DNA of 64,000 nucleotides from positions 62,001 through 126,000 of the forward strand of contig NW_026925650.1 in NCBI RefSeq assembly GCF_032062105.1, in the 5' to 3' direction. The notes beneath the pieces are model-generated. The model was given only the letters and a program-made list of their open reading frames with translations, did not search any database and had not been told where the DNA came from. The translations under genes were made by a program, and so were the position numbers. The stretch is from Saccostrea cucullata (lineage: Eukaryota). Below, piece by piece: positions 557 to 60,856 of the stretch (the first letter of the stretch is position 1; each line of letters opens with the position of its first letter).

Positions 557-3533
557 TTTGTTTAACCTCCAAAAACTCTAGCCTTGTGCTGGCTTTCGTG
601 TAGTCCCCGCGGTCCTCTAATCCAGCGTTCACAAACTTATCAATGGTCACCTTAAGTAGGTCAATGTCCTTCACAGCTGTGGCTTCCTTGACCCCCTTCC
701 TCAACAGCTTCTCTCGAGCATTCTGTAACATACAGAACGCATTAATACGGTTCAAACAAAAATACAGACGGCGAGAAAAAGAGAGTACAATCTAATCTTT
801 TTTATTATTTTCCAATCATTAATTCAGTATTTGGTGCTAGTTAGATTCCCCTTTATAATGAATTTGTTTGTATTTAAATTCAACTCAACAAAAAATATAA
901 ATGACTTGCATGCAAAGAAAAGTATGGTCCCCGTTACATTGTCATATTTTTTGCAATCCGTTATTCGTCGTTTAGCAATGAATTCAACGGACGCAGAGTT
1001 ATTATCTTGCAACTCTTTATCAACAGTATATGGGAAAATTAAAAACTGTACAAAATTGATTGCTGGCCTAGGTGCGATAGGGCGAAAATTAGCCTCTGGA
1101 CATTAAACTTGGTTTTTACCTCCCATCCCTTCCTCCTCTTGGTTGAGGGTCTTGGATCTTCTGTACAGATCATGTAATTGCAGATATTGGCCATCTCTCC
1201 CCTCACGCCTTTGGTCTTACCGTAGATTTTGATCAGATAGTCCCCGTGCTGAGGAATTTTCCCCATAATATCGATCCTCCCTACGTTCTTTTTACAATAA
1301 AATCTTTCCTTTAGTTCATTCTCACTTAGAAGGATGTGCAAGAACTTCACTTTAATGTTAATACCAGTTTCAACCATGATTGTGATGTGAATGTCTTGAT
1401 GGGGTTTCATGACGAGTAGTCCTGATTTTTGAGAAGGATCAATTAGTCCACCCTTCTGGGCTTCGTATGAATAACCAAGACCGATCCACGGCGCATCGGG
1501 GAAAGGTACACAATTTTCTCGCGGATTTTCACAAACAAGGCGAAAATCTGCAATCCATGGAACATTTTCACGGTCGACATGTCCACCGAAAATTGACAGT
1601 TTGTACACACCGGGAACTGGGAATCTAACAATAAAAGTCCAAATATTATCCTCATAATTCATGAGGACGTATTTGTTCAATGGCGTCTTGTTGTCAAGGT
1701 CAACCTCAGACTCGTCACGCTTGAACAGCAGGTCATAGTTCATTTGTGTTGGGTAGTCGTCGGGAACTCGGAACGCGATTTCAACAACGCCGTCAATATC
1801 GTGTAAAATACAGCTTTGTTCTGTGATCAGCTTCAAACCCAGTCCAAAATATGCCTCCTGTAAAAAAGGAACGCGGACAAAGCGGTTAAGGTCATACGGT
1901 ACGGTCAAGAGCTGCCATTTTGGGTCGTCCGGGAAGCAGAAATAGAGGAAGTCATGCGGATCGGTGAGAAAGAAAAACTCGTTGATTTTCTGTATGGTCC
2001 ATCCTTCTGTGTTTTCCTCTTCGTCGTCGTAGGCCGTCCACTTGTCCAGGCCTGACTTGCCAATCACTGTTTGACACGCCCACAAAGGATGGATCAATCT
2101 CCAGCTGTCCTTGACCCAAACCACGTTCCATTTGGACCTGAGGTCTTTCAGTGTATCCGTAGTCCCTACTTCGTATCCGGCACTTTTGCAGACTCCCTTT
2201 ATTATCGCACATTTTATTCCCGATTTTCTACAAAGGAATAATACATTCCTCAAGAATATTAAAGATAAATGTTGTACACAAATGTTGTTCTTAATAGTTT
2301 TTATTTTACAGAAGAATTTGTTTCCATATGTATTCATTATTTTTACCTGCAGAGTACTGCAAAGAGCGAGGCATACGAAGCTCTCCCCTCCTTAATGAGT
2401 TTCATGAATCCTCTTGGTGTTCTCGCGAGATCTTCAGGCGGGTATCCTTCCAGATTTTTGTATTTAGTTGTTGTGATTGGCTGAACGCATAGCCACATGA
2501 ACAGCGCACGCACCTTCTGCATGTCAGTCCTGAACGGCACCACGAGGTAGTCGAGAAGCTGCTGGAAAGATAAGTCGATCTTACCAGGAATCTGGAAAAG
2601 AATGAAATTAATTTAAACGTATAACTTCTTCTGCAATGAAACTGAAAATGAAAATAAAAGGCGATGAGAATGTGATGCGTGATGGTATTAATTCAGTTAC
2701 TTTGGATAAAAAATGTTTACGTAGAAAGATAGTAGGTCTAAATTGGTTCTTGTGCTATCAAACGCTGTTACTGTGACAGAGGCAAGGATATCCAACCCCA
2801 AATATAGATTATTTGTAAAATTGATTCCATTAAATTCATATATTTATTAACTGCAAGTATTATAACTAATCCTTCGAGAATCTGAATCCGCCGCTGAAAT
2901 AAACAGCGTCGTACAAAAATGGTCAGTTCATATCAGTAATTTTTGTCAGTACTATTTCGCTGGTTCTACTTTCCCCCTAGCTGCTTATATCCCACCCTGA
3001 TCTGAAAATTTTCATAAGTCGACATAAATAATATAGATTTGTTCACACCTTCCTGACATGCTGGTGTACATCTTTATACTTCCAGTGTTCGTAAATATCG
3101 TCTTTCTTCAGAGAATTCTGTTTGGGTGGAGGGTAGTCCTCGTCCGGGGGAAACTCGGGGACGTCTACCTATCATTAGGAAGGTAATTAAAAGATTAAAT
3201 TTAGCTACATGTAGGTCAACTTAGGAAACAAACTAAAAAATAAAATACATATGTATTATGCCAAGTTTATGCTAAACACATCTTACGTGTTCCATGGGAC
3301 CTGTTTTCAGGAAATATTTTTTCTGCTCCAAAAACTACTAGAATTCTTTGTGGCATGTGCAAGTTTTTTTATATTGATACTTCAGTACATGAAGTTCGGT
3401 TTACGTGCTCTAGTTGGACAGAAAAAAGACAATTCAGCTGTATACTTACGTCTTCTTCGTCTGGCTCCCGTTGGACTCCAGGCTTTTTGACATTCGATGT
3501 CGAGGATGCTTGTGTCGAGGAATTACTGCCCAT
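557..3533 (-). CDS. Hillarin / kyphoscoliosis-peptidase (KY)-like transglutaminase-fold protein, 3' end outside window
   Basis: Exons (minus) 3533-3450, 3168-3049, 2591-2347, 2227-1120, 722-557; all GT-AG and phase-consistent (574 codons in window). Starts MGSNSS (N-myristoylation-like). Contains hillarin/KY motifs: KVRALFMWL, SYASLFAVLCR, IIKGVCKSAGYEVG, WNVV..KDSWRLIHPLW, INEFFFLTDP, FPDDPKWQLL, and Ig-like RFPVPGVYKLSIFG repeats. Last exon ends in phase 1 and I found no further exon before position 1. Confidence 0.85.
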
Positions 3534-3855: not shown

Positions 3856-6659
<2,804 letters not shown>

Positions 6660-30248: not shown

Positions 30249-30856
30249 TTTTATTTTCAGGTATTGTTGATATATGATTGTTCTCTTTCTTAGGAACCTC
30301 AATTAACAATCAGTTATTATGTCAAAGAACTTTGCGACAAAGTTACTTGTTGATTATTTTTTCATTGAACGATTAGACTGTTATGGGCAAAATATCCAGA
30401 ATCCATGACATATGAGTATATTTTTTAGTTTGCAAGATAATCAATACTGCGTAGAAGCATGTTATCAATATGATCTCTGCATATTGCAAAACCCCCTTGT
30501 TCTATATTTGTCACTGACCTCTTTAAGCTAAGGATATTTAATTGACTATATATACGCTTATTTTTGGAAAGGATATTCTTATCGACCTATTCTGTTGCTG
30601 ATATTTGACCATTTCCGACAAATAAACTGTTCTTGTTATAAAAATTAACTTACATGGAAAGAAATATAAAACTCAGAAAAAATCTTTCAGCTTTTGTGAC
30701 AGAACGCTACGGAAGGGGTCACGTGACCGCCTATATCACCTGATTCGCGCATGAGCAGAACGGTGGCAGATGTGCATTAAATCTGAAGTGGACTAATCTA
30801 AAAAATAAGCAACATTGAAACCACATATTGTTTCTTTTATTGAATTTATTCAATTA

Positions 30857-30885
30857 GTTCGCGAACTTTTTGATCACCCCTCGTA
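30857..30885. mobile_element. Solitary mariner-type TIR remnant
   Basis: Reverse complement reads TACGAGGGGTGATCAAAAAGTTCGCG, a typical mariner terminus; I saw no partner TIR. Confidence 0.5.
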
Positions 30886-31694
30886 TAGTCGATCAGCAGT
30901 CAACGGGTGTAAGCAAAAAGGTTAGTTTGTTTTTGCCTTCTGTCATAAAAATTAAAGTATTTGCATGTTTGTTGACGGATTTAACTGGCCTTTTATAAGG
31001 TGGCTGGAATATCAATAATTTTGTGTAATATCATACACTTTAATTTATGGTTGTGGAGAAAAGTTAATTGTACGACGAAAAAAAGTTTAAAGCGGAGCGA
31101 CACTGAAACTTTATCTCGTCAGAACCAGCATTTACATACCAGCTGAATGAACCGTAAAAACTGCGTAGAAAAGTTTGAGAGAACATGTCAATTGGATTAA
31201 GTTTTGCCCTGCGTGACCACATCGTAACCAGTCATAAAATTTGTAGAAAACCACATTTTTGTTTACAGATTACTTCCAAATTGGGAAAAAAGAAAACATT
31301 TTTAAATTTTGGTACAAAATGCAAATATCTACACGCATACCTCTTTTAGAACTTAAAAGTCGTTAATCGTTCAAACATTCATTTGCGCATCTCCTATTTT
31401 GTAATGTTTTGTTGACATTGATATTGATTGTTATAGGGCCTACCTTTAAAAAATTGTTCCTATACAAATCTATAGTAAAAAAGTCCAACATTTCTAATGT
31501 TTTACTGTGCGGGCATAAAAAATCGCAAGAGGTTACATTACGGAAGAAGTGCAAAATACATGTATGTAAAAAAAAAAAAATAAAATGAAAGGTATAACAA
31601 AACATTTATTGACTATGTGGGTTACATCACGGAAGAAGTACAAAATACATTTATGTAAAAAAAAAAATTAAAATGAAAGGTAAAAAAAAAAACA

Positions 31695-31829
31695 TTTATT
31701 GACTGTTCTCGGGCAAAATGCGTTTTGTCGACCCTCGAACCTAATTGTCTCCCTTCGTCCTAACGGCCTCAGGCAGACAGTTAGGATCTTGGGTCCGACA
31801 AAACGCATGTTGCCCTCGAACTCAATAAA
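31695..31829. repeat. ~135-bp imperfect palindrome (Crypton-like non-autonomous element core), preceded by an ~80-bp tandem duplication (31531-31704)
   Basis: tttattga...gggcaa.atgcgttttgtcg ... cgacaaaacgcat.ttgccc...tcaataaa. Confidence 0.65.
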
Positions 31830-31942
31830 TCTATAATACTGTTCGACGTTGTCTCCATATCGTTCATTTTATAAATATATGTGATTTTTTAAGATTTTCA
31901 AATTTTTCTCTTATAATACACGTACATGAGATTAAACATTTC

Positions 31943-32095
31943 TTAGTCCCCTACGGGTGAAACAGGAGGGGGAATATAGGTTTCCTCTGCGTCTGTCCGT
32001 CCGTCCGCCTGTCTTTCCCCCATGTCTGTCAGTCTGTCCTACTTGGTTTTCCGCACTTTTTTTTCTAAACGCTTGCAGATATTAAGCTGATTTTT
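31943..32095 (+). mobile_element. Truncated HINE 5' end abutting the raftlin-like exon
   Basis: ttagtcccctac..gtgaaac.ggagggg hairpin, GTCC microsatellite, gatattaagctgattttt. Confidence 0.7.
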
Positions 32096-32115
32096 TTTTT
32101 CAAAATAACACAGGT

Positions 32116-33618
32116 ATGGGTTGCGTTGGAAGTTCACAGTCCACGCTTGTTGGGATACCCCCACAGCCTCCCTATCATGGCGCCCCATGTGAATACCGAT
32201 TTGAGAACTTCGAAATTACTTACGTGGAGCAGTTTAATCTGGCATTTATGCCCACTGCAGGCAAGCCATTCATGACCTCGGACGAAAAGGTTTACAGCGT
32301 CACTTTGGGGTCATTGTATGACCTTGGATTCCGTTTGTTGACTTTTTCGGTTATTCCAGCTTCGCTCAAGGTCAGTGGGGTTTTTACAGTTAATGTCAAG
32401 CACACGCAAAAGTATCAAGGAATCTGTAGGAAACTGCCCGAGGACGAATTACCCCAGCAATGGTCACTCAAAGTCGTCAAGTCCTATTTGCCCTCTGAAG
32501 TTTTCACTCATGGGGTATTCCGAATGGGCGATGGAAAAATTACTGCCGACGCCAATCACATATTTCAGACAATCACGAACGAGGCTGCAAACGGGGCTAG
32601 GCTTCTTTGTATTGAAATAACAGGGTTTAACTCTCAAAATGTAAAGCAACACGGAGCAACAAGCGCCGCTGCCGGCGCCTTTGATGGCCAAGGTGCTATG
32701 AATGTTTGCTTCTCTGGCCAGAGTCCAGACATGAGTAAGTATTTTTATTTGTTAGTTTAATTGTTTTTAATACCGAAAAGAATCTTCAAAAATATTTTGA
32801 AGGACAGCAAGCAGACAAGACAGATGAATCACTATGGGTAAAAAATAAACCAACTATTTTTCTTTCATAAACCAACTATTTTTCTTTCATCGATACACGA
32901 ATACGCTTTTGAAAAACACGTATATCTTATTCAAAATGTACAATCCATTGTACATTCACTTTTAGCTATTTTACCCATTGTTTCCAAGTACATGTATTAA
33001 TTTTCTCTGTCTTTAGTTCCAGGAGTGGACATCTTCTTTGAGATACCCCGGAACCCATCCTCCAACCGATACATTTACCAGTGTGTTACAATTCCAATGA
33101 AAATCACCTGGACAATGGCCATGGCATTGGGAGGAAAATGGATTGTCGAGATGAAATGGGTTGGTGTGACGTCACAGTACCTTGGCACGGGTTGGAAACT
33201 AGTAGACATCTTCATGGACCAAAACAATAGAGGTTTCCGGGATGGGTTCACCACGTCCAAAATAACGATCAACCAGAACTGCGTATTTATTTTCGAAAAA
33301 GAGCAGTCGAAGCTAAACGATAACAAACCAGTGTACGAAGCTACAATGGTAGAATACAACGCCCCCGGTAAAATGGGTGGAATTGGTACCGCCACGGCGC
33401 AGTTCAACCCGGCATGGGAACCAGTTCTTGGCCAGCTTGGAACTTATGGATGGGAGCTAGTCAAAATTTTAGACACACCAGCAATAAAAATTGACGGCGG
33501 TGGATTCGGCTCATTTTCATATAAAAAGGTCATGTGGATGTTTTTGCATCGAAAAATAGTTGCTGCTCCACCTGATCCCTCCGGTGGCGCACCGACTCCA
33601 GCGGAACCACCAAAATAA
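32116..33618 (+). CDS. Raftlin-family lipid-raft protein (406 aa, 2 coding exons)
   Basis: Exons 32116-32734 and 33017-33618 (phase 1). N-terminal MGC dual-acylation motif. Raftlin-like segments CEYRF.NF, LYDLGFRL, W......LGTGWKLV, CVFIFE, VLGQLGTYGWELVKILDTP, FLHRK. Confidence 0.8.
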
Positions 33619-36600
33619 TCGACAGGTGTAAAACTTTTCCGAACTTGTCTTACTGTGATATCTTCGCGTCTATTGGACATCTACCTGCAACTAGTTACTC
33701 TATCTGTCCTTTCAAACTAGTCGCCATTCAACAACTCACTAGGTCTTGTCTGTGATATTGTCTATTGAATCTCTATTTGGACTTGTGTCGGCTTCTTCTT
33801 TATACAGGCACATTGTATTTATAAAGGAATGAGTAAATTTTACCATGCATGTAATATAGCAAAATGTCCAAGATTTGGTGCCCTCCAAATGAGAAATGAT
33901 TTATTAATTGTGTCTGCGAGTTGTAGACAACACAGAAAAGCAGCAGCATTTTACTGCTCTGACATTTTTGGCACTCCATTTTGCATGTTTCATTATTTTG
34001 TAAGAACATGTATTTCAGTCTCTGGAATGATTAATATTTCACATAATTAAAGAAACTACCACTAGATTTCTTTGATCTAGTTTATATAATTATGTGTAAG
34101 TACAGAAAGAAGAAAAAAATACTAAGTAATGCAAAATGTTTTAAGAGTGTTACATGTAATGTAGTAATATTCATGTAACAAGAACGATATACACTTATAC
34201 GTAAAATAGTCTCTTTTACTGGAATAACATGGAATCCTTTTTTTCAATATCTATATATAATTACTAAATTCAGTATATATTCCTTATGCTAAAAAGAAAA
34301 AAAAAAACGATGAGTACCGGATATAAGAAAGAGCCATAGCTGCCTTACCGACGAAACGGCCGACTCAAGTATTTAAAAGGAAATCACCTGTTTCAATTTT
34401 TATCTTTATCACAATTTAACTGCACTTTATGGCGCTGCAATGCCGATCAAATACAATATAGAATTAATCCAATTTTGTTTAATTTTATGGGGAATTTATG
34501 GGGAGAAATTGTTGAAACTAATACTTTTTAAAGATGTTAAATTCAGTTTTCTTTTTTAAAAAGTTTGGAAAACAGACTTGTTATTTTCTTTTTAACAATG
34601 CCATTGTAATATGCATTTTAAAGGTCTTTCAACAGAGTTACGTATTGCTGATTTTTGTCAAACGACTAGTTTGGTTGTATGAAAGATTGAAAAAGAAACA
34701 GTTCTCCTTGTTGACTGATGAGTGAAACCAGAAGAGAAAGAGAAAAGTACTTAAGCAGTTGGGAATTGAAACTTTACAACAGCATTAAATAGAATAATGA
34801 TCCTTGATCAAGTCTCTTTATGTTCTTAGTGTAGTCTACTTACATGCCACATTACATTATAATCAGACTAAAAATGTATTTGGAGTAGCATTTTGAGAGC
34901 ATTTAAGGTAAGGTTTGCGTCTCCCTCCAATTCATATTTTTTAAAATCTGCACACATGTTATATATCAATTTATTCAGGGAGATTACCTTCATCATTTCA
35001 TATGATTTTCAAAGAAATCGCCCGTCCCATTTTTTTAATAAAAGACGCCAAATTTAACGTATTTCGTATTTCACCTCGAATATTATTTTCATTGAAAAAA
35101 TTGATTTATTTTATAAATTATCAAACTCAAATTATTAAATTGACCTGAATTAGTATCATTCATGCTTCTATTATTTAAACTTTTAATTTTCCATTATCAA
35201 AAATGTGATAATTTGGGTAAAAAAGAAGATTTTTCAATTTTCCTTCATAAAGTAAATCTGTTGCCATGGCAACAAAAATATAAAAATCAACATTTTCCAT
35301 ATCTACCGATTCCATCAAAATCCATGAAGTTATTAATTTGATCATTTTCATTAAATTGAACTGAAAAAATATGTATGTCCCCAATATTATTTCCATGGAA
35401 ACAAGGGCTATATTAGGGTTCTGAACATAAAAATCATGCTTTTTCTACACTTTGAAAGACAACATTGATATCACTTTGTCATGGAGTACTCATCAGACTA
35501 AATGTTATTTATTATATTGTTTTTAGGCATAAATTGGCCATAAATATTCTAAATAACACTCCATCTGTGCTACATGATGGTATAAAAATTTATTTCATGG
35601 AAGAACTCTAGTATTTATGGCAATCTTTGCATCTGAATATTCTGATGAAATTGTCCATAAATTATACTGCAACACCTTTTGAAGTATATGTATATAAACA
35701 TACTTCAGAACGTGTTGCAACTAAACCAATTAAGATCCAATGAATTTAAACTCATGCATTTAGTCATTCCAACATGTATTATTTTCTAGACATCTTTGTA
35801 GCAATTTAGCAAAATATCTGTATTCAGTTATGGCTGGCGACTTTGTCATTATACATGTATGCCATTCTAGTGAAATGTAAGCATTGCATCCACGAAGCTG
35901 CTGTTTTTATTATTTGATGATTTCTTTACTTCGAAAAGTAGAAATGCTATCTTTAAAGTAATGTTTGTTTGCCCTCTCTTGACTCAGGGTAAAATTATTG
36001 GGTCAGTAGGTGAGAAAATCTTCAACATATTTTTTAAGGGAATAGGAGGAATAAAAAGAAAAAAATTACGGTCCTGTATTGAAAAAAAAAGTTTTGAGTC
36101 TGGCCATTTTAGTCAGTCGGTCGGGAGAGGCCAGCAACCAAACATTTTTTTAAAGACGGCCTAATCTATTTCTACACTTCATGGACATTAGATCAATCAT
36201 TGAATTACTGGTAGTCTGAGAATCTAAATTGAAATGTCTGAAAGTAAGAACAAAAAAGATAAAATTCTAAGTGACATCAATTCATACTTTAATGAGTTTA
36301 CAGAGTACTACTAATTTCATAGAAAAGGCAAATTCTGCAAAATGACATAACGTTACACTGTCGTAAATATTTGTCAAGAACAGGGGAAAAGAAAAAATGC
36401 TACAGTGACAGATATATCCCCTGGACATCTATGAAATAATAATTTAAATAAAACAAAATTTTCTACTTTATAAAATCTAAATAAATAAAAAATCAAAAAA
36501 TTATAAATGTAAACAATTTTAAAAATGAAAAAACCTTACAACTTACTAGACAGGACGTTGTAAAAAACATTAAATTTTCTTCTATACTATCTATAGACAT

Positions 36601-47700: not shown

Positions 47701-47986
47701 ATTCATACTGTGCGCTCAGATTATAAAATAAAAAGATAAACTTGGAACTTCACGGACAATGTAAGCAAAACATTCTTATTTGCAACAAAATTTTTTTTTT
47801 CAATTTAAAAATAAGCACAAAAAGCCTTAAAATGCAAGTAAATAACAAATGTAATCAAGCCACGATTCTCATAATATAAAAAAGACAAAGAGTCATGACG
47901 CAATATCACAATGTACAATGTTACAAATGACATCATATCGTTTGATATCGTTTGATATGTAAATGACGACATCAGAGGTCACGTGA

Positions 47987-49704
47987 CTATCCACAAAGCT
48001 GACTGAGCCGGGCTGCTTGACCCATGAGGGTCATGATGTCGGAAGTGGCCGAGTTCAGAGTCGTATTCAGGCTGGACATCTTTGTGTTCATGTCCGTTTT
48101 AATGGCGTCCACGTACTGCTTGGCCGACTTCCCGTTTGTGGTGAAGTTTCCTTTTAGAGCATGGACATCCTGTTCTAACTGTAGAAGTTCTCCAGCTTGT
48201 GTTGTAATCTTAAGTCAACAACAACAACAAATATGAAAGATTACAGGCAATCGGAAATATTTTGCATAAATTTTGCAATATTTATTGTTACTGACTTTTG
48301 AAATTTTTATTTTTTATCGAAAATGTATATTTGGTAAAATTTCAATAAAATATAGATGCAAACAATTTCAATGCAATAAAGGGCCATATCTGCATCTTTT
48401 TATGCATTTATGAAATTTGCTACAGATTTACGAATGAATAAAGTTAAATCACTTACCGTGGTGTTGAGATTCTGCAAATCCTTTTCGACTTTGAGGGCGT
48501 CTGGAATGAGTTTGGATATATCTCTCTTGTTCTTGAAAATCTGCATCTTGTCCTTGATAATGTTACCTCCCAGCTGCTGAAGGTTAGCGATCACCGTAGA
48601 CACGTTCTTGCTGGTCTCCAGTATCTCCTGTTGAAGTATGGTCATTTTTGGCGTGACGTCCTTCTGGAATTGGGTGAGGTTATTAATGGCGTCCTTGACC
48701 TCCTGCTCTGTGACCTTTAGCCTGGAGAACGCCGCCTGTGACGAGGTTTTGGCTTTGGCGATTTCTTGCGTCTGGTTGGTTACTTCTGTCTTGATTTGGT
48801 CTGCTTTGTTGGTCAGGTCTGTGATCTGTTTAGAGTGAGACTGTTCTACTTGTTTTACCTCTGATTCGAGTTTCTGGAGTTGAGACTTGAGTTGGTTCAG
48901 AAGAGCCGTGGGCGCTGTTGGCGCCGGTCCAGTGGTAGCTGCAGCGCCACTTGTGGTGCGCGTGCCTTGGGTGGTTGTTGTGGTCGCCGGTGGCATTGTG
49001 GCGGCAGGCGTAGATCCCGATTGTAAATTCTTCAGCATATTCTCAAGAGTTATAAGCTTCAGCTCAGCAGCTGCTATTTTAGTCGTCTGGTCGTTGATCT
49101 GTTTATTTAAAGCCGTCTGAATCTTCATTTCTTCAACAGCACTCTTTTGCAATTGCATAGTAACGTTGAAAATTTTACCGTTAATGTCACTGATGGCTTT
49201 CGTAAGTAAATCTTTGGTATCGTGTAACATCTGATTCAGCACTGCAGAATTTCCGGATGATCCTCCGCTTCCAGTGGATGCAGTGGCCGCCAACTGCTTT
49301 AATTTTTGGACTTCGTTGGTCAAGTCATTCAATTTGCTCATATAACTAGCGCCATCACTCTGAATACGGGCTAGCGTGCTCTGAATAATGCTGTTCTGAG
49401 ACACATATTGGAACTTTGTTTTATCGAGATCCTGTTTCACTTGGTCCACTTTCTTATCCAAAGCAGAGGAAGTTCCAGCACAAGCGCCTTTTGGATCTGC
49501 CACATGGAATTGGTAAGTACATGTTCCACTGTTTTGAGTGTTGCCACTGTTAGGAGCGGGCTGTGGCGGTTTTGTCGTCGTTACTTTGGCTTTCTGGGTG
49601 GTTGTTGTTTTTAAGCTCAATTTCGTCGGCAAGGGTTTGATTGGAATAAACTGAGCGGAACAAGCCGCCAGTGCCACCAAAAATATCGTGAGTTTTCCGT
49701 ACAT
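47987..49704 (-). CDS. Secreted long coiled-coil glycoprotein A (489 aa), angiopoietin-like Cys N-terminal motif, no C-terminal globular domain
   Basis: Exons (minus) 49704-48457 and 48208-47987 (phase 0). Signal peptide MYGKLTIFLVALAACSA, T/P/K-rich linker, CTYQFHVADPKGAC, heptad-rich body with a T/P/A hinge, several N-glycan sequons, ends LSQLCG. Confidence 0.88.
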
Positions 49705-49771
49705 TATTGAGTCTGAATTAGCCGTTCCGATGCAGACGACGTTTATTAAAGTGGTCAGGTAGTCTCGGATC

Positions 49772-49778
49772 TTTATAA
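49772..49778 (-). promoter_or_regulatory. TATA-like box upstream of coiled-coil gene A
   Basis: Minus-strand CTTATAA(AG) about 70 bp upstream of the ATG, with a GC box (ggggcggg) just upstream. Confidence 0.4.
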
Positions 49779-52700
49779 GTTTAGGGGCGGGAGAGTTGTG
49801 GGGCTTATCTTGTTTGCATAAACAATTGGCGAATGATTGGCGGATATGAGAGCTGAAGGCAAACTGAACAAACAGGCTTCTAACAGCTTCATGTTTCTCA
49901 GGAAAAAGACATCCTGGTAATCTAAGAGACTGAAAAAAATGACTGATGTTGACCAGTTGTCCGAGTTAAACTTATACAAAGCCATCGGTAGTGGTTGGGG
50001 GCTGGTTTTGTCGCTAAAACATGAAACTTGCACCCTGTGCTCTGTATCGGCACTTTGCGTCAGAATTACCAAATAAATGGCGATTCCAGACTGCAGAGAG
50101 CGGCTCCACATACAACCAAATTAAATTTACTTTAGATTCTTTCGCGAACTATAAACTTGTTCCAATTTTCTAGACGTGTAATATCTAGGTGTAGCATCAT
50201 TTGGCTATGTATCTATAATCTAACAGGTTTTTTTACCCGTTCTAGGGGAAAAGTGTTGTCATTTTAGTCCAAACGTATATAAACTTTTCCTTGGTTGTCC
50301 TGATTATCTACCAATTAAATGGGGGTCATGGCGAATTGCTGCGTGTTTTACGGGGATTGGAATGAACACAATTTAGATTTCATGTAAGTTAGTGCTATAT
50401 TTCCCCTCATGTTTTGGCCATGAGGTATAAACTAGGTTTTGATTTGAAAAGCTGCTTATCTTAGTCATACACGCCTCTTTAATTTGATAACGAGAAAAAT
50501 ATAAACATTTATAGTAATTGTAAAGAAATCAGAGAGATTTTCAGTTTATGTTATTTTTTTCCTTTTGCACTGCTTGCATTTTGCCCTGAAAATTAAAAAC
50601 TTCTCTTTGAAAAAAGGGGGACTTAAAATGATGCAAAAATCTATATACATGTATAAATAAGTCAAGCCTAAGTAACAAAACAAAAATATACTTTTTTCTT
50701 TGCAAATCTCAGACTTATTTTAAGTCTATGAATGTGTTTGCAAAACCAATTCAGTGTAAACAAATCTTGACCAAAAAAATCCTATTCCTCCAAGTATCTA
50801 AGTTGTAGGACATTAAAAAAAATCTTATTTTTAATACATTAGCTTATTGTAAAAAATATTGAACAAAAATAAATGTAACTACTTAGTATATTAATTCAGC
50901 GAAGAATTAAAGAGTTTTCATCTTAATCGTAAAATGTTTTGTAAAAAGGGTCAAAAGAGATACATGAATATCCATGATTTAGGAATATATCGCATTTATG
51001 AAAAGAAACTAGAGATACTGCTCACTAAATGATACCCCCGCCTTGCATATGGTTAAAATGTTAAAATGTTTTGCTCAGGGAGAAGTCAACGTTTATCATA
51101 CATGTAATGTTTTATGTTAGGTTACCACTAATATCTTTTATCTACTTAAAATATCAAATTAATGAAAATATATAATAGATTGTCAGACTTTCGTATTTTT
51201 TTTTATTTGAGGTGAAAGGGAAATATCAAATCAAATTTTAAAAAGTTCTCTGAAGAAGCTATTACAATTAAAGTGCAATTAATATTTAGCGATATTTAAT
51301 TTTAGCGAACTTGGCACCATCGCTAATAATGCCAAAATTAAATCCTCGCTAAAAATTCTACTTATATTGTTAATGTCGATATATGTTTATCTAAATGTCC
51401 AATTCAAGGCCAGCAGACTTTTCTTTTTCTAGAAGTATTTGAAAAAAAATATGCTTCATGTGAATACAGAAATAGATCAGCGCAATAAGCACCCATGAAA
51501 ATTCCGGCAGATTTTTGGAAAAAATTTTCTGGAGTAAAAAAAATGCGTTCTCTGTGCTTATGAAGGTGTAATATAATCAATTATCAGTCAATCATTACAA
51601 AGTCTGAAACTAATCACAGAAAGTCGCATACATGTATTTTAACAAGACATATTTTTAAAAAATAGTAGTTGAATTTAAATTCATTAAAAGTGTAGTAAAA
51701 AATGGGTATCCAAACGGAGAGAAAGGAGTGTAATTTAAAAGAAAAAATAAATTTACCCTTTTTTCGTTTCTAAGAGATACAATTTATCTACAATGACTAG
51801 TTCTATCATCAATGAAGTTTTAAACATTTGTTTGTGTACCAGGATTGTTCTTTCAGTCGAAGATGAGTAAAAGTTTGAATGAAATGTTGTGAAACATAAG
51901 ACAATAAACATCGGCATTTCCTTAATTAACGCGCACTCATCCTTTGTAAAAGACGAGGGCACACCTTTACCAAGGCATGGGTTATTCTAGATCTTCTCTT
52001 CTTAGTAGGGATACCTTGATGACAAATTCAACCAATTTAGACAATCGTTATAGGGAAGTTAAAGAAAATGTACTGTAATCACAAGAAATTACCAGTATTT
52101 CTCTGATTCAATAAAATTCCAGTTGAATCACAAATTAATAAATTAAATAAATGAAACGATATCAAAATATTGCGCGTTCGATTACATTAAAAGCAAAATA
52201 TGTTTTGAATTAAATATTTAAAACTATGTATTAGTCTAAAACAAATAATATTAATTATCAAACGAAATCGTGTCAAAAATTTCGAATTCGATAACATTTA
52301 ATTAGAACTTTAATTTTTTCAAACAAATCAATGCTTCATTTTGCAGAAGATAACTTAATAAAAATTCAAACAAAAGCAAGCCAGTTTTTAACATGCTCAA
52401 ACTTGAAAATTAATGACTGAATGGTTAATAACCTCTTTGCCATGTTCCCGTTTTGCACAAATCTGATACCTCTTTGTATCAAAAGCATCCTGATATTAAT
52501 AATGTAAATTAAAGATATTGAATATTAAATTAATAATTTTTAAAATAAAAATTATTATTCATATATATGAAAATATTTAACAACAAAATTCTTCGAACGA
52601 GTGTAAATTAGCTACGGGTATGAGGAAGTATCTATTGTTGAAAAGGAAGAAATATACACCGATGAGATCATCGTCATGTGAACGTTTGTCAGAACAACAA

Positions 52701-53253
52701 AATTTCAAATTTCGGGATAAATATAGTTTTTAATGGATGGAGGTCGCATAAAATTAGTTGTTTCGTAAGCTGATTTGGTGGGAGTTTGGTTTCACAGCTA
52801 TGTTTGACACTAAACAATGAAAAACAATACGATAAAGTTTCTATTATGTGGGGTACTTAATCGGCGCCGAGAATAAGTCTTTTTGACAAAACACTATTTT
52901 ATTTGGTCATTTCAAACCACGGGTCCCGTGAAATCTTGATTTTACAGTTTCACATAATCCGAAATATTTTCTGTTTATCCCCTTACGATAAGATTAGAGA
53001 GGAGGTTGATGGCTGCAGCCAAACTTTCAATTAGTGTATTCTGTCGACATTCCATTGGAAGCTAGGAACAAAATCATTATGCAACCAATAAGCGATTTTA
53101 GGGGGATTTCAGTCGCAGTTGTTTTCCTCTCATTGGTGATGGTAAAACAAGTTCATTTCCGTCGTCGATAGCAGGCAATCACTCCGCGGCCTAATCTACG
53201 AAGCCTGACGTCGACGCCTCCTATACTCCATCAAATCGCTCACGTTTTTCGGC

Positions 53254-53260
53254 TATAAGA
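53254..53260 (+). promoter_or_regulatory. TATA-like box upstream of coiled-coil gene B
   Basis: TATAAGA about 70 bp upstream of the ATG at 53323. Confidence 0.4.
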
Positions 53261-53322
53261 TACGACTCCGGTTCAGGTGGTGGACAGATTTGATTTAATC
53301 CCTTAAAGAAGTAACTACCAAC

Positions 53323-54573
53323 ATGAAGCCTGTGGCAGTCTATATTTGGTTACTTCTGGGCGTGTCTCGCGCTGTGTGGGGATCCAATTCCTGTAGCTAC
53401 TATTACAATATACCCAAATCTTCGGGGGCAACGTGCGAGTCCCAGGGCGGTGTGGATAGAGACTTAGAGGAAAAAATATGGAAGTTGGAGGGAGGCATTG
53501 AAGGAATCAAAGTTATCGGGAAAGGGAATATGAATTTAGTGACAACGGTTCAAAATACTGCTGGTCAGGTACAATCGAGTCAAAAGATGTCCGACCTGAA
53601 TGCCTTACAGAAGCAGATTGATGGTCTAAAAACTATTTTTAAGTCGCTCCCAACCGGAAATCAACACCCGCGTGCTGCTAAACCAACGCTTCAGAAAGAG
53701 GCTGCAGAATTATCAATGGCGGAATGGAAGTTGATCAATGTTTCCTTGGAATTTAAAGCGAATCAAAGAAGCAGATCTATTGTGATGAGCGGCATAGAGC
53801 AAAAACTACAGGCTCAAGAGAAAAAATTGACAGATTTACTTAACAAGATCGCCATTTTAGAGACCAAGATCATGTCGCACGTGTCTCATCATAGAGGTAA
53901 ACGCGCCGCTACGCCATCTTCTCAAGATGCCGTAATAACCAACATGACCAACCAAGCCATAGATCTGCGGGTTGACGTTCGCTCTATTGGAAAGAATGAG
54001 CAGAAGAAGTTAACAGATTTAACTAAAACGATAGACGGATTGAAGAAACCGGTGACGGACGCCAAAGCGGATCTGAAGAATCTCACCTCCTCTCTCAATG
54101 GAGTGGCAACCAGATTAATGAAGGTGTCTAGCGATGCTAAGAAACTTCAGCAAACCGCGCAGAATGTGTACGGGAACGTCAAACCGAAGCTGGATCAAGT
54201 CCAGAAGGAATATCGCAACCTCTCCGAGCAACTCCGAAATGCCACCATCGATTACAGTACAGCCCTAAACGACCTGGCACAGAAGTCAAACGATGTGAAA
54301 CAAAACACGAAAGACGTTGCAAAACTGAAAGCTGATTATATTAAGTTTACTAATGACTTAAGCTACTTGCATATGAATGTAACGGTCCAGCATAACGATA
54401 TGGTGAAACTGGAGAAAAACCCCATCGTTTTGATCGGAAAGGTGGATTTCGACGTAAAGACCTTCCTTTTGAAGGCTGATAAGTCCCTCGCTCAAGTCAA
54501 CAGAGTTCTACCAGTTCTACAAAAACGTATTAAAATGCTCGGTGGCAAACCAACAACAATCCCCTCTGGTTAA
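53323..54573 (+). CDS. Secreted long coiled-coil glycoprotein B (416 aa, single coding exon), paralog of A, with furin site RGKR
   Basis: Signal peptide MKPVAVYIWLLLGVSRAVWG, CSYYYNIPKSSGATC, heptad repeats, HHRGKR, several N-x-S/T sequons; AATAAA at about 54707. Confidence 0.9.
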   Translation: MKPVAVYIWLLLGVSRAVWGSNSCSYYYNIPKSSGATCESQGGVDRDLEEKIWKLEGGIEGIKVIGKGNMNLVTTVQNTAGQVQSSQKMSDLNALQKQIDGLKTIFKSLPTGNQHPRAAKPTLQKEAAELSMAEWKLINVSLEFKANQRSRSIVMSGIEQKLQAQEKKLTDLLNKIAILETKIMSHVSHHRGKRAATPSSQDAVITNMTNQAIDLRVDVRSIGKNEQKKLTDLTKTIDGLKKPVTDAKADLKNLTSSLNGVATRLMKVSSDAKKLQQTAQNVYGNVKPKLDQVQKEYRNLSEQLRNATIDYSTALNDLAQKSNDVKQNTKDVAKLKADYIKFTNDLSYLHMNVTVQHNDMVKLEKNPIVLIGKVDFDVKTFLLKADKSLAQVNRVLPVLQKRIKMLGGKPTTIPSG

Positions 54574-56426
54574 AATGACCTTCGATGCGTCCGTGTCAAG
54601 GACAAATGGTGCAGTGACATTTGATTTTTCGAAAAACGATTGATTTTAGATTTTTTGTGTTTTTGTTTTCTTTACAATGGTAAGGATGTTAATATTTAGC
54701 TTATTTAATAAATGGTTATATTTCTCGAGCATGCAAAATCGAGGTTAAAGAATTTTGTATAAACTCTTACAAAACAATTAAAATTTTACAGAGCAGACAC
54801 ATGAACAATTTCATTGTTTTAAATAATTTAAGCTTGTAGAATGTTTACATGTGCATATATATCGAAACAGTTTATGATTATTTAAATATCATTATTAAAT
54901 GAGAAGAATTCATTTTAAGGTTTAAACCACACCTGTTTTGGAGTGTAAGCTCAAAGATTTATTTATTACTATACAAATGTTTTCAATAATACTTTACGTC
55001 ATTATGATCGTATATTCCAAATTCCAAAGGTGGGTGCTTTTCTAAAACCTATGTATACCACTATGATACCAGTTACAAAGTAAAAGCAACATAGAAGGAA
55101 AAGAATATTGTTAATTAATGGGACTTGATACTAAAAAAAATTCTTCAGTTAGTAATTCCTCTTAATGATAAAAATAGCCTATTCAAAAATCCAGGTTGTA
55201 GATTATTCATTAGTTTCCAACTTGAATATAAATTTGTAAATAAGTAATCGTAAAATCATCCTGTTTCATGGTTTAAAAAATGGATAACTAGATGGGCAGG
55301 GAAATGGGGTTGTTTTTCTTAAATTGTGTTTACCTGCTCGGACTGACGCTCTCTGGCAATAACGCTCACATGGGCCGCATTCTTGTTACAAGAACCATAA
55401 CTTCTGCACGGCGTATGAAAGCTAGTATAGGAAAATATAATCTTATACACAGTCTTTAGATAATCATTATTTTTTCCCAAAGACTAACATGCCTTTCTTA
55501 TTATCAATTGTACATGTACGTGGTCACGAGGTCGTAATTTAAATTCTTACATGAAAATGTTAAGTTTTCAAAACGTTATAAGCATAACATGTGAAAAACT
55601 GGTATCTTGTAAAAAAAAAATATCTGATGTTTATCAAGGTCTATTCAATTTTCTCAGATTTAGAAAATAAAATTAAGTGTCAATAGATGGCGCCAATGTC
55701 AAGTAGAATCCTTTGAGATCAATGAAACCGATGGCGACATCTGTCAATTGCATTTAACGTCAAAAGCGACCTCTACCGGAACAACTTAACGAGTGCAATC
55801 GAGATTAAATTTGTCTTCCTTGAATGCATTGATTTATATATTTAAACAAACGACAACATTAAGAAGTATATAAAATAGGAAGGGAAAAGAAAAAGTCACA
55901 AATCGCTAGTTCTGCTATCTAGACCGCGTCGGTTCGAGACCGCGGTACTATCAGCCTAGCCCCGCCCAGATCACCGAGAGAAGAACAGCGCACAATGCCC
56001 CGGCTGTGATGGCTTTTGACGTCTTTCTAATTGGGGAGATGGTTATTATATCCATATTGTATGTTTGCTGTCTCTTAGGATCAAATTGCCAGCTAAACTT
56101 CAAGCAATAAGACGTTTCCTCTTAAAGAAACCCAAATTTGAGAACGGAGTTGAGGTTCATTTATAAGACTTAACCGTCACGCAAAACCAAATTACATCCT
56201 GGTGGCATACTTATTAATTCGATTTAAGGACTACTTTGTTTAAAAAGTCCTTTTGTTTTATTAGAATTAATCAAAATGATCGAATTGGAGGCTCGACTTT
56301 GGCTCGGATTTTCCCTGTGAAATCCATGAATGCTTATAATAAGCCGACTTGACACGAAAACTTTTAGGAAATATAAATAGTATTAGCATGTGCTAGAACA
56401 GTTTCTATAGAGTTCCAGGGATAATA

Positions 56427-59400
56427 ATGTTGCCAACTCATTTTCCGGGACAAGCAAGTCTAGCTGGGTTCCATAGCATTGATGCTCTTTTAGGAATTCG
56501 CGAGGAAATGCGAGAGAATTACAGCATGTGTTCTCACCCTGGACAAAAACACGTGCAGGGAAATTCCAGAGTTCAGTCAACTTCATCTGATGCAGGTAAG
56601 TTTTTTTCATGTAGATAATTTTACTTATATTAAATGTACATCAAAATTCGTGAGATTATGATAATCTTTTTTAAAAATATCAATTGATATCAAGGATGCA
56701 TTGATTGAATTATTTTATCTGAATACAGTTTAATTATGCATTGGCCCCAAATTGACGTTAAAATAAAATGAAAAGCAACAATTTTCTAATTCAATGTTGT
56801 TCAGGGAAAAATACACAAGATAAGAATTAAATAACTGACAGTAAAATAAAAACTGATAAAAATTATGTATGAAATTAAAACTAAGATTAAAGTTGGCTGC
56901 ATGTAAAAAAAAACAAACAAACAAACAAACAAACCTAAATCAGAAAAAGATGGGGAAAAAATAATTACTAGTTTTTCTTATACGAAGAAGCTTGGAAACC
57001 CAAATCGGTAGATATATTTTTATCAGATGTACATATATTTATTTATCATTGTCTTTTATCAAAATAATCAATTTGAATCCTTATTATATAAATGAAATGA
57101 TGTGTGTTTCGGGAAACCTGAAATAAATTATATAAATGTTTGTACCTTACTTAAATACACAAAAGTAATTAAAAAATCAGGAAGACTTCTTGTTAAAATT
57201 AGATATTGTAATTGTAAGTAAAGTTCAATGTACACATATTTAGAATGTTTTGGCTACCAACTACATATTTCTTTGTGTATGGTCATTTGTTATAATATTT
57301 TTTGTACAAATTAAAACAATGAAATAGTGAGTCTCGCACGAAATATAACATCAGAAATATTTTTTGAGAATTTAAGATACTCTCTCTAAGTTAATTAGCG
57401 TTATAAAATAATAATAAAATTCATGTATGGTTATTTAACAACAAAATCGATGGATTCGGCATTGGTCCTTTCAAAAGAATGAGAATTTTAGATAAAAATC
57501 TATATATAATCTAACTTAGAAATATTATATTAAGAAACATGTCTATTACAATGCTTAAAAAGTAATCTAGAATGGTGTTTTCATAACCTATAGTTTAACA
57601 CCGCAATACTAATTTCAGATCCTTGGGAAAGAAATGTTCCCACATGTACGATTCAATTTCAAATTATGTAAAAAGTTTTGAAAACGGAAAAAAGGCTGTA
57701 TTTGAGAATAAAATTTTATTGCAGTCGCTCATTTCTTTGTTCAATTAGGGTGTTTGTGTTTTTAATGAAGAAAACTACCTAATTGTGTTAATTCATTTTG
57801 TAAGTTTTGCTCAAAGTTAAATTGATTTTTGTTTGAAGTTTATTTATAATATATAACTCTAACATGTAGTTTCAAATAAGTAAATTGACTTAAACTTGTG
57901 CACCACAAACTGCAATAGTTATTGCCGAAAAGAAATACACTAAAAAGTTAAAAACACACAAAAAAATATTGAAAATAATAAAATAATGAAACCACAAACA
58001 CAACGGCAAAATACGAATGTAACTACCAGGCACAGTCTTTATAATTAACTCTCCTTAAAGTTAACAAAATATTTTGTATTTATTATGAATTTAAACGGAA
58101 TATTCTTAAGAGAGAGACTTAAGATTATGTGTCCTTCAATTAAAAATTCAAATTTCAATTAAAATTTCACTATACATATAATCAAACTTTACATTTCACT
58201 TTGAGTAATCCAAGATGAACCCGATAGAAAAATGTCAATTAAGGAAGCTATAAGATTCCTCTTAATAAATATATGCCAAAAAGAGGCTCGTCAAACCTAA
58301 TTAAAGTTTTTATCTTGTTAAACTGAAATCAAAGGCGCGTTTGTATCGAAGGTATTAAACTTAAATGACACCACCATTGCATTGAGAAAATTATAATTTT
58401 TTGAAGAGAGAAACGAGACACCGACATCGTAATGCGCTGTCACATCTCAATTCAATAGCAACCTCGTTAGCGGCTGGAGAGCGCGGCGCGGCGCAACACG
58501 GGCGACAGTTTGAAAACTAAGGATGTCGCCTGCAAGTTAAAGAAATCCCGGGTGTTAAATATCTTCTTATTTCCCCATTCTTCTTTAAACGGCGCCCATT
58601 TACAGTTATTGAGCTGTGAAATTTGTATGTGTATTTTGTGGAAAATAAACTTAATTCAATTATAAAATCTCGCCTAATGATATATTTTGAGGCATTTGGT
58701 GGCGCGGGTTCTTTTGTTAGATGTAATTTGAGAGGGGTGTCGAAAAGATAAATGTCAAATTTTATCATTTGTTACCTCGGGTCTATTAAAGATTGTATCA
58801 AGCTTTACAACTCATTCGACGTGTCATTTTGGCTCTTCTCTGTCAAAAACATTCTCTGAAGTTTGCATCGTTGATTTTCAATTTATTTGAGGTGGGTTTA
58901 AGCAAATATTTTGCACAAAAGAAAACAAAAATATAAATCACACGCTCAAGCAAATTTATCTATTTCCCAAATGTAATGCAGGTATATATGGATCAAAAGC
59001 TAGATTAAACTCTCGTATAAAGACCGTCAATATTTCCGTCTTCGAATTTATTTGTCTTTGATATCTGTGATGATTGTGCTATAATTTAATCTAGGAAACG
59101 ACATGAAGCTGCAAAGAAATATTGAAGGAAGAAAATCCGGGAAGTTGGAAAGAAATTCGGACCCCCGCAAGAAAACAAGGCGAAACCGCACGACGTTTAC
59201 AACATATCAATTACACGAGCTGGAAAGAGCGTTCGAAAAGTCGCATTACCCGGATGTATACAGTCGAGAGGAACTGGCCATGAAAATAGATCTCCCGGAA
59301 GTCCGAGTACAGGTATGTTTAGAGATTTATTGAATATTTTACACTTGGAAAACTAATCATGAATATGAGTGATATTATTAAGTTTTAACATGATAATTAT

Positions 59401-60856
59401 GCTACTCTAAAAAGTCCACGAAATACTTTTTGTTTCGTTCTGGGTTTTTATATCATATTTTGACATTTGGTGTTTTTTTCGGTCTTTTATTTTATTCATG
59501 GCATATTTTTCTCCATTTGCATCCTTTTCTGCTTGTGTTTGAAAACAAATGACCATACCGTTATGAATTAATATATAGTGTTTTAGTTTGATTATATGTA
59601 CAAAGTTTGGTCTGATGAATGATAAAACATCCTAACCCCAAGTAATGTATGTAATCGACTTTTATCTTTAAAAAAAAAGATTGATTAGAATTGTTTAAGA
59701 CTAGTTCATTAGCTCGATTCATTACAGTTTATACATTTTGTCAATAGCTATCCTCTGTGACAGAAGGGTCTTTCATATGACTTGGGGTAACCTCGTTGTG
59801 CTAACAAGGTTTATAGGAAAGATATCAATGGAGAGATGTTAGACTTGATCCATTCTATTGCAGCTCTTAGCCCCGGTAATTGACTTAGCATGGGATCAGC
59901 TCACTTTGTACTTCAGTGTCCGATACAGAGGGACAGCTGGCCGTGTGACAGAGATAATCCGGACTCAACTATAGGCCGTCCCCACTAACAAGTTAATGGC
60001 TCAAAAGTAACCCTCAATTATGCACATGAATGAACTCCGAATCGAGTAAAGAAAGGCGACGAGTGTTTTTAATTGCATCCAAGAGTTTTTCGATGGGGGG
60101 GATTTTTAAACCAATCTTTTCTCTGTCTGCATAGCTTTAGGGTACGTCACGCGGCGCGCCCCGCCCCCTCCTTGTTCGCCCCCGATTCGATATTGTATCT
60201 ACTGATTCTAAATCAAACAGAATCGTTTTTACTGACGTCTGTAGTATTTGGTGTCTTTGTTCCTCTGTCTTTTAGCGTGTTATTCAATTAACTGGATATT
60301 TCTATCAAACGAGGGGTCCACTTTCACGAAATATGTCGTCAAGTTTTTGAGAAATTTAAATAGAATAAAAACAGACCTCTACTGCAATTGAAAATTATAA
60401 GTATATATAATATGTATTTTTTCAATAATATTTAATTCTAAATCTCAGGTGTGGTTTCAAAATAGACGGGCTAAATGGCGGCGTCAAGACAAGCTGGAAA
60501 ATTCAACGCTGAGGATCAATGAAGACTTCAGTTCTGGGCTGGTTCCACGAAAACCTCCAGGTGCCTTCGGATCACCCTTACCTCTCGATCCATGGCTTAC
60601 GCCGTCTATGAAAAACGCCGAGTCATCCAGTGTGACGTCAATTGCGCCAGACACTTGTTTGACATCATACCCCAATCTGTTTCCTTCTCCATATGCACAT
60701 TCTAGCAATGGTATGGGTAATACATACCGAGGATTCACGGGAGTTTTTGGAGGCTGTCCGAAAATAACAGACTTTGATCCCCGAAATTCTAGCTTAATAG
60801 CGTGCTTAAGAATGAAGGCAAAAGAACATGTGCATAGTGTTGATAAAAAGTACTGA
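56427..60856 (+). CDS. Rx: Retinal homeobox protein Rx (264 aa, 3 exons)
   Basis: Exons 56427-56595, 59095-59312, 60449-60856 in phase. Octapeptide HSIDALLG; homeodomain [45 protein letters not shown]|[12 protein letters not shown] with the conserved PRD-class intron; LPLDPWL motif; OAR-like [16 protein letters not shown]. Confidence 0.95.

What the first reader, a model, noticed from the sequence alone, without database searches (positions are those of the whole stretch)
47987..54573. Head-to-head pair of paralogous 'headless angiopoietin-like' secreted coiled-coil proteins with gapless register conservation: candidate heteromeric extracellular fibre
Seen: two divergently transcribed genes 3.6 kb apart, both with a signal peptide, a C-x-Y-x-[FY]-x-[VI]-x(4-5)-GA-(T)-C motif and long coiled coils. 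My manual alignment is colinear. A 45-residue block (KIFNVT...KLITLE vs KLINVS...KIAILE) and a 137-residue block (KQITDL...QLE vs KKLTDL...KLE) align with no gaps. The longer block has about 32/137 identities, including a shared V-x-P-K helix break, and runs across gene A's intron. The NV[ST] sequon is at the same position in both. Known: the Cys motif resembles the N-terminal clustering motif of angiopoietin/ANGPTL proteins (CxYxF), which normally end in a fibrinogen domain; neither protein here has one. Inference: conserving exact length at about 23% identity plus a shared upstream region suggests co-expressed subunits of a disulfide-clustered heteromeric rod or fibre (adhesive, mucus, shell or larval matrix).
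Basis: partly seen in the sequence, partly recalled or inferred. Interest (0 to 1): 0.85.

Follow-up and report, generated by a model that had tools for sequence, protein, structure and literature searches.

The report
Unnamed mollusc secreted rod-protein pair
Two back-to-back oyster genes are the two ancient branches of an unnamed protein family, found here only in bivalves and snails, that makes secreted jointed rods about 50 nm long; they probably build an extracellular fibre or gel, possibly together, but where and when they are made is still unknown.

Summary
Observation confirmed. The window is rock oyster (gene A is identical to Saccostrea cucullata LOC134269474). A (489 aa, one intron) and B (416 aa) are true paralogues: 32/137 gapless identities, beating shuffles and, in the ungapped and held-out-profile tests, 118 unrelated coiled coils. 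Each is single-copy and under purifying selection, and the head-to-head pair is kept in Magallana and Crassostrea.

They belong to an undescribed family (no Pfam, structure or paper found) with A and B branches, spanning oysters, scallops, mussels, clams, unionids, abalone, whelk and sea slugs. All share a two-Cys N-terminal motif; most keep fixed-length coils, variable hinges and one N-glycan site. None has a globular head, and 29/33 end in Gly or Gly-Lys, an amidation signal.

Gapless register is family-wide, so it does not prove a heteromer. Each gene has its own conserved TATA promoter, and no partner lies within 10 kb in seven non-oyster loci. Angiopoietin membership was not met. For coupling: oyster A and B are unexpectedly alike at A377-418 (0/1000 simulations), and charges mildly favour A/B pairing. 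No expression data could be obtained. The scan had not reported this family on other DNA.

The parts
48457..49704 (-). Gene A exon 1 (residues 1-416)
   Evidence: ORF; equals P0005 1-416; orthologues in oysters, scallops, mussels
48209..48456 (-). Gene A intron, phase 0, GT-AG; same position in mussel and scallop A genes, absent from B
47987..48208 (-). Gene A exon 2 (residues 417-489 and stop); ends Cys-Gly
49654..49704 (-). A signal peptide (1-17), followed by Gln (possible pyroglutamate)
   Evidence: read from sequence; Gln follows the leader in most A-type members; processing inferred
49480..49521 (-). A two-Cys motif (C62-C75)
   Evidence: both Cys aligned in 33/33 family members
49159..49167 (-). 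A conserved N-glycosylation sequon (N180)
   Evidence: sequon in 27/33 members at this column
48904..49026 (-). A Thr/Pro-rich hinge between coils 2 and 3 (227-267); length varies 15-53 across the family
48457..48915 (-). A long coil 3 (264-416, continues to about 433 in exon 2) with stutters near 290 and at Pro352
48457..48576 (-). A tract 377-416 with oyster-specific excess similarity to B
49714..50262 (-). Conserved proximal promoter block of A (TATA at 49771-49777, CCAAT, GC box)
   Evidence: 76-79% identical in Magallana and Crassostrea; CCAAT, GC box and TATA also seen upstream of mussel and scallop A
52812..53318 (+). Conserved proximal promoter block of B (TATA at 53254-53260, CCAAT)
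   Evidence: 78-80% identical in two other oysters
53323..54573 (+). Gene B, single exon, 416 aa; ends Ser-Gly
   Evidence: orthologues about 70% identical; dN/dS about 0.07
53323..53382 (+). B signal peptide (1-20)
   Evidence: read from sequence; conserved hydrophobic leader
53392..53436 (+). B two-Cys motif (C24-C38)
53737..53745 (+). B conserved N-glycosylation sequon (N139), aligned with A N180
53893..53904 (+). B furin-type site R-G-K-R (191-194) in the hinge between coils 2 and 3
   Evidence: invariant in oyster B, absent at this place from non-oyster B
53932..54414 (+). B long coil 3 (204-364), in register with A coil 3
54259..54378 (+). B tract 313-352, counterpart of the A excess-similarity tract

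Best explanation
A and B are the oyster's single copies of the two branches of an old mollusc family of secreted structural rod proteins. Shown: signal-like leader, two-Cys motif, four helical segments with heptad periodicity joined by variable hinges, no head domain, a conserved N-glycan site, terminal Gly. Inferred mechanism: the chains pass through the secretory pathway of a gland cell, are glycosylated, probably amidated at the C-terminus (A also probably capped by pyroglutamate; oyster B probably nicked by furin), zip into parallel in-register two- or three-stranded coiled coils about 50 nm long, are tied together at the N-terminal cysteines, and bundle into an extracellular fibre, membrane or gel made at a restricted stage or site. 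Mixed A/B rods in oysters are about as likely as not (about 0.45); A may also work without a neighbouring B.
For: Homology and fold; helices and hinges match in both models; period 3.5 and shared stutters. Coil lengths nearly fixed (63/70/85/68 residues in most members) while hinges vary 10-53. Family range and two branches, support 99/98. No domain in any member scanned. 29/33 end in Gly or Gly-Lys against 11/111 ending in Gly among unrelated proteins. Purifying selection, dN/dS about 0.04 and 0.07. Single copy each. For coupling in oysters: linkage in three genera, excess A-B similarity at A377-418, net g-e' charge favours mixed rods in three species (+1, +3, +2 against -2, -3, -1). Precedent: whelk egg-capsule proteins form secreted heterodimeric coiled coils (PMC9999432).
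Against: Structure models are single-chain and low-confidence (pLDDT 42 and 50). Core side-chain volumes of A and B are uncorrelated (r 0.04). The charge preference is small and the three species are not independent. Promoters are separate and the genes are unlinked within 10 kb outside oysters. Terminal Gly is a signal only; amidation is not shown.
Confidence: 0.6

Rival explanations
1. Obligate A/B heteromeric fibre: the two chains must pair, like type I and II keratins or whelk egg-capsule proteins, which is why both branches and their register have survived since before the major bivalve groups split.
For: Equal coil lengths and stutters in both branches; two long-lived branches; linkage in oysters; local excess similarity; mild charge preference.
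Against: Register conservation is equally seen among A orthologues. No B-type sequence could be assigned to mussels or scallops, which carry one or two A genes, though the B search was insensitive. Separate promoters; no core-size complementarity.
Confidence: 0.3
2. Independent homo-oligomers: A and B each build their own rods in different tissues or stages; their adjacency is a relic of the original duplication, and the local similarity is an old gene-conversion scar between neighbours.
For: Two separate conserved promoters with little conserved between; not adjacent elsewhere; the similarity tract is short, strongest just before A's intron, and carries B-type Asp residues at heptad g positions that scallop and mussel A mostly lack.
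Against: Third codon positions are saturated and give no conversion signal; the whole coil-3 tree still separates A from B; retention of the tract since the oyster genera split needs selection.
Confidence: 0.3
3. Soluble multivalent signal or scaffold rather than a material: a clustered, amidated, furin-processed secreted factor acting like a headless angiopoietin-type regulator (compare ANGPTL8, from memory), perhaps from neurosecretory cells, given the Rx-like neighbour.
For: Terminal Gly, N-terminal Gln and a furin site are marks of regulated secretory products; Cys spacing recalls angiopoietin and myocilin (memory only); Rx-like gene linked in three oysters; no spliced oyster A sequence among the Logan, ENA and JGI proteins seen, which may mean low expression.
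Against: No receptor-binding domain; the rods (about 350 helical residues) are far longer than in such factors; fixed rod length with freely varying surface suits a structural role; furin site is oyster-B only; ANG-1 model does not match.
Confidence: 0.15
4. The similarity is generic coiled-coil convergence and the genes are unrelated.
For: Only about 22% identity; one long repetitive control outscored B in gapped alignment to A.
Against: An A-only profile of the N-terminal half ranks all nine B proteins above all 118 unrelated coiled coils by best-domain score; each gene is the other's best genome-wide hit; motif, sequon, stutters, Pro and terminal Gly all coincide.
Confidence: 0.02

Closest known systems
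Whelk egg-capsule proteins (ECPs of Busycon/Busycotypus and Pugilina)
   Same: Molluscan extracellular coiled-coil proteins with two or three helical domains split by linkers, used as two or three paralogues that most likely form heterodimers (PMC9999432).
   Different: No named ECP appeared among the family hits whose names I looked up; no direct sequence comparison was possible. This family is also in oysters, mussels and clams, which make no such capsule (own knowledge), and has four segments, a two-Cys motif and terminal Gly.
Mussel stem protein MSP-1
   Same: Bivalve extracellular coiled-coil protein with three coiled regions and short linkers, with relatives in oysters and scallops (PMC12568988).
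   Different: 584 aa, no signal peptide, intermediate-filament domain and an NCX-like C-terminus; the mussel member of this family is 441 aa with a signal-like leader and no such domain.
Angiopoietin/ANGPTL proteins and myocilin (N-terminal clustering segment plus coiled coil)
   Same: Signal peptide, then a short two-Cys segment, then a coiled coil. Angiopoietin-1 has a superclustering domain, coiled coil, linker and fibrinogen-like domain (PMC4609988). Motif and Cys spacing look alike from memory.
   Different: No fibrinogen or olfactomedin head in any member scanned; rod much longer and in four parts; Pfam ANG-1 (PF25443) does not hit the locus at E up to 10; no angiopoietin among solved-structure hits.
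Paramyosin and other labels given by automatic annotation ('paramyosin-like', 'EEA1-like', 'FAM81B-like')
   Same: Long heptad repeats.
   Different: These are intracellular proteins (own knowledge); no such Pfam domain passes its cut-off here. The labels are coiled-coil artefacts, and the three papers whose 'paramyosin-like' entries I read list it with muscle proteins or, where an accession is given, a different one.

Membership tests
Angiopoietin/ANGPTL | C-terminal fibrinogen-related domain | tested here: not met
   No Pfam domain in A, B or the other members scanned; stops conserved right after the last coil
Angiopoietin/ANGPTL | Match to the Pfam ANG-1 model PF25443 | tested here: not met
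   Locus absent from 95 genome matches at E up to 10; whether the model covers the Cys motif is not known
Angiopoietin/ANGPTL | Homology of the two-Cys clustering segment | tested here: inconclusive
   N-terminal profile finds no angiopoietin in Pfam or PDB; no reference N-terminus was available by tool for a direct comparison
Angiopoietin/ANGPTL | Signal peptide followed by coiled coil | tested here: met
   Leader read from sequence; helices and period 3.5
Angiopoietin/ANGPTL | Inter-chain disulfide clustering | not testable with these tools
   Needs non-reducing gels or mass spectrometry
Intermediate-filament-like secreted proteins (MSP-1, hagfish thread keratins) | Intermediate-filament rod domain above cut-off | tested here: not met
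   PF00038 scores 10-13 bits in A and B against a cut-off of 40
Intermediate-filament-like secreted proteins (MSP-1) | No signal peptide (unconventional secretion) | tested here: not met
   Leaders present across the family; MSP-1 lacks one
Whelk egg-capsule proteins | Head-rod-tail layout with helical domains split by linkers | tested here: met
   four segments here against two or three
Whelk egg-capsule proteins | Sequence homology to ECPs | tested here: inconclusive
Whelk egg-capsule proteins | Heterodimeric assembly and gland-specific expression | not testable with these tools
C1q-domain, multimerin/EMILIN or olfactomedin proteins | C1q, EMI or olfactomedin domain | tested here: not met
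   the multimerin-2 shape hit covers only the rod, TM 0.47 on a low-confidence model
Substrates of peptide amidation (PAM) | Secreted protein ending in Gly or Gly-basic | tested here: met
   29/33 members; background 11/111; the modification itself was not tested

The most novel reading that the evidence does not exclude
A and B are the two partner chains of an undescribed extracellular fibre that bivalves and snails have shared for about half a billion years: a disulfide-clustered, C-terminally amidated, length-controlled heteromeric rod, whose partners in oysters have stayed linked and partly re-matched in sequence.
Probability: 0.25. Interest if true: 0.75.

Novelty: new variant of a known kind. 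Interest (0 to 1): 0.52.

Why it matters
Molluscan coiled-coil materials (egg capsules, byssus root) are few and each is tied to one lineage. This family spans bivalves and gastropods, has no domain model, name or paper that I could find, and is hidden under wrong automatic labels or left uncalled (B is missing from the Crassostrea virginica gene calls). Its fixed rod length and near-universal terminal glycine point to a shared secreted structure and, if amidation is confirmed, to an unusual use of peptide-hormone processing on a 45-50 kDa structural chain. With one A and one B gene in a farmed, well-sampled animal, its site of expression and the heteromer idea can be tested directly.

Tried and rejected
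A Logan contig with a spliced-looking member (SRR27896758) could not be tied to a paper. Literature: twelve accessions in main texts and three papers' supplements gave nothing. The word-indexed search with a B alignment missed even known B members, so B's range is undersampled. Pfam, PDB and Atlas gave only generic coiled-coil hits; three arthropod Atlas clusters scoring 0.81-0.85 for both proteins are untested leads. Rejected: a downstream head exon; a compact bidirectional promoter; whole-coil gene conversion; a DNA-level conversion signal (saturated); core-size complementarity; further family copies in this genome. The bacterial promoter scan does not apply to this animal.

Full report
What is there. 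The region holds two divergently transcribed genes whose start codons are 3618 bases apart. Gene A (minus strand) has exon 1 at 49704-48457, a phase-0 GT-AG intron and exon 2 at 48208-47987. It is 100% identical to Saccostrea cucullata LOC134269474, 489 aa (P0005). Gene B (plus strand, 53323-54573) is one exon of 416 aa. On method: I searched A exon by exon by reference and submitted no joined sequence of my own to any search. Full-length work used the database record P0005 that the tool returned; the exons were joined only inside one local script, to check that they equal P0005.

The 45-residue block is gapless (8 identities; score 38, next offset 23). The 137-residue block has exactly 32 identities (score 136, next offset 50) and crosses A's intron. 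BLASTP gives E 2e-12 and profile comparison 97.3%. The gapped score of 230 exceeds all shuffles, including heptad-preserving ones (maximum 144). Against 118 unrelated natural coiled coils the ungapped block reaches at most 101, although one long repetitive control scored 247 with gaps. An A-only profile of the N-terminal half ranks all nine B proteins above all controls by best-domain score. In the 1.17-Gb genome each gene is the other's best hit, and no third copy was found. Both are under purifying selection between Saccostrea and Magallana (dN 0.135 and 0.193; dS about 3 and saturated).

The family. A has orthologues at 73-79% in other oysters and 35-41% in scallops and mussels. A profile search of 1.84 billion representatives returned full-length members from Haliotis, Nucella, Elysia, Mercenaria, Mya, Mactra, Potamilus and Sinanodonta, plus unlabelled assemblies. 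Every named member is a bivalve or gastropod; other molluscan classes and other phyla were not seen, but only the best 150 hits were listed. A tree of 33 members splits into A and B branches (99/98). The A branch broadly follows mollusc phylogeny, and B includes a unionid on a long branch, so the duplication predates at least the oyster-unionid split and, by midpoint rooting only, the bivalve-gastropod split.

Shared anatomy. Both cysteines are aligned in 33/33 members, the N-glycan sequon in 27/33 and the coil-3 proline in 24/33. Single-chain models are low in confidence (pLDDT 42 and 50) but give the same four helices in A (80-142, 152-228, 264-433, 445-487) and B (46-107, 122-185, 206-364, 367-407), about 50 nm in sum. 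Hydrophobic period is 3.5, with the same two stutters in both branches. Coil lengths are almost invariant (63, 70, 85 and 68 residues in most members; B's first coil is 66-69), while hinges range from 10 to 53; some snail members have a shorter rod. No member scanned has a fibrinogen, C1q or other domain, and the stop codons are conserved in three oysters.

29 of 33 complete members end in Gly or Gly-Lys, against 11 of 111 unrelated proteins ending in Gly, across both branches and with otherwise different tails. For a secreted protein this is the established signal for C-terminal amidation (own knowledge). Most A-type leaders are followed by Gln, a pyroglutamate candidate, and oyster B has an invariant furin-type site in the hinge where A has a Thr/Pro tract (first noted in finding s1-711104). 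That site is absent at this place from non-oyster B proteins. These modifications are inferred, not shown.

Is it a heteromer? The head-to-head pair is conserved in Magallana gigas and Crassostrea virginica, beside an Rx-like homeobox gene. No B gene lies within 10 kb of A in two mussels, a scallop (two tandem A genes), a clam, an abalone or an unlabelled assembly, nor A near B in Sinanodonta. Intergenic conservation is almost confined to two blocks of about 500 bp, one before each gene, each with its own TATA and CCAAT boxes: two promoters, not one shared one. Gapless register also holds among distant A orthologues, so it is not evidence for pairing. On the other side, oyster A and oyster B are 20% identical over A353-428 where all other A-B combinations give 12-13%. 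The excess peaks at A377-418 and was reached by 0 of 1000 tree simulations for the best 42-residue window (the model is site-homogeneous, so the value is optimistic). No such excess in identity is seen in the N-terminal half. This could be co-adaptation, shared constraint or an old gene conversion; third positions are saturated and the whole coil-3 tree still separates the branches. Charge pairs at g-e' slightly favour mixed rods in all three oysters, but core volumes are uncorrelated. I put co-assembly in oysters at about 0.45 and an obligate, family-wide heteromer at 0.25-0.3.

Where it acts is unknown. One indirect hint: of the Logan, ENA and JGI A proteins that reach the splice junction, 63 read into the intron and only one non-oyster sequence looks spliced. 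This may mean narrow expression, or may reflect how that collection was built. Short forkhead-, GATA- and K50-homeodomain-like motifs occur in both promoter blocks, but I did not test their enrichment. Adhesive, mucus, shell or larval matrix all remain open; presence in non-byssate clams and in sea slugs argues against a byssus- or cement-specific role and fits a larval or gland product (inference).

Comparison with known systems. It works most like whelk egg-capsule proteins: paralogous rods split by linkers that most likely form heterodimers (PMC9999432). Homology to them could not be shown. Mussel MSP-1 differs in size, lacks a signal peptide and carries an intermediate-filament domain (PMC12568988). 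Angiopoietin-1 has a clustering domain, coiled coil and fibrinogen-like domain (PMC4609988); the defining head is absent here and the Pfam ANG-1 model does not match, so these are not angiopoietins, though the Cys motif may cluster rods in the same way. No paper in the library names any of twelve accessions tried.

Verdict. A real, ancient and apparently undescribed family of secreted molluscan rod proteins, with good evidence for its anatomy, a testable amidation hint, and an open question on co-assembly and site of action. New variant of a known kind; interest 0.52.

Noticed in passing
window 56427-60856 (+): Paired-class homeobox gene with octapeptide and OAR motif, Rx-like by my reading, starting 1.9 kb after gene B; linked to the pair in three oyster genera, with conserved flanking blocks at 55714-55816, 55956-56511 and 58135-58928.
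   Followed up: partly
window 47979-47986: A CACGTG palindrome directly after gene A's stop codon is conserved in all three oysters although the stop codon itself differs.
   Followed up: no
window 48805-48832 and 49078-49105; 53819-53849 and 54002-54032: Both genes carry an internal repeat between coil 2 and the start of coil 3 (77-79% DNA identity), hinting that the rod grew by internal duplication.
   Followed up: no
L010 5215-6459: The B orthologue is an intact 414-codon ORF in Crassostrea virginica but is missing from that assembly's gene calls.
   Followed up: yes
window 19120-19656 and 30451-34399: The Jiraiya-domain gene lies about 28 kb from gene A here but about 6 kb away in the other two oysters; a Raftlin-like gene lies in between.
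   Followed up: partly
L007 1270-1980 (G000:C22112): Another ORF with a hydrophobic leader and coiled coil, weakly similar to B (E 0.007) but without the two-Cys motif.
   Followed up: partly
   Followed up: partly
ESM Atlas clusters of 440, 541 and 545 aa: The same three unnamed arthropod clusters are the top feature matches for both A and B (0.81-0.85, below the reliable range); possible distant relatives.
   Followed up: no
window 1039-2337 and 6126-6659: KY-like immunoglobulin-domain ORF and a pyridoxal-dependent decarboxylase exon; ordinary neighbours.
   Followed up: no
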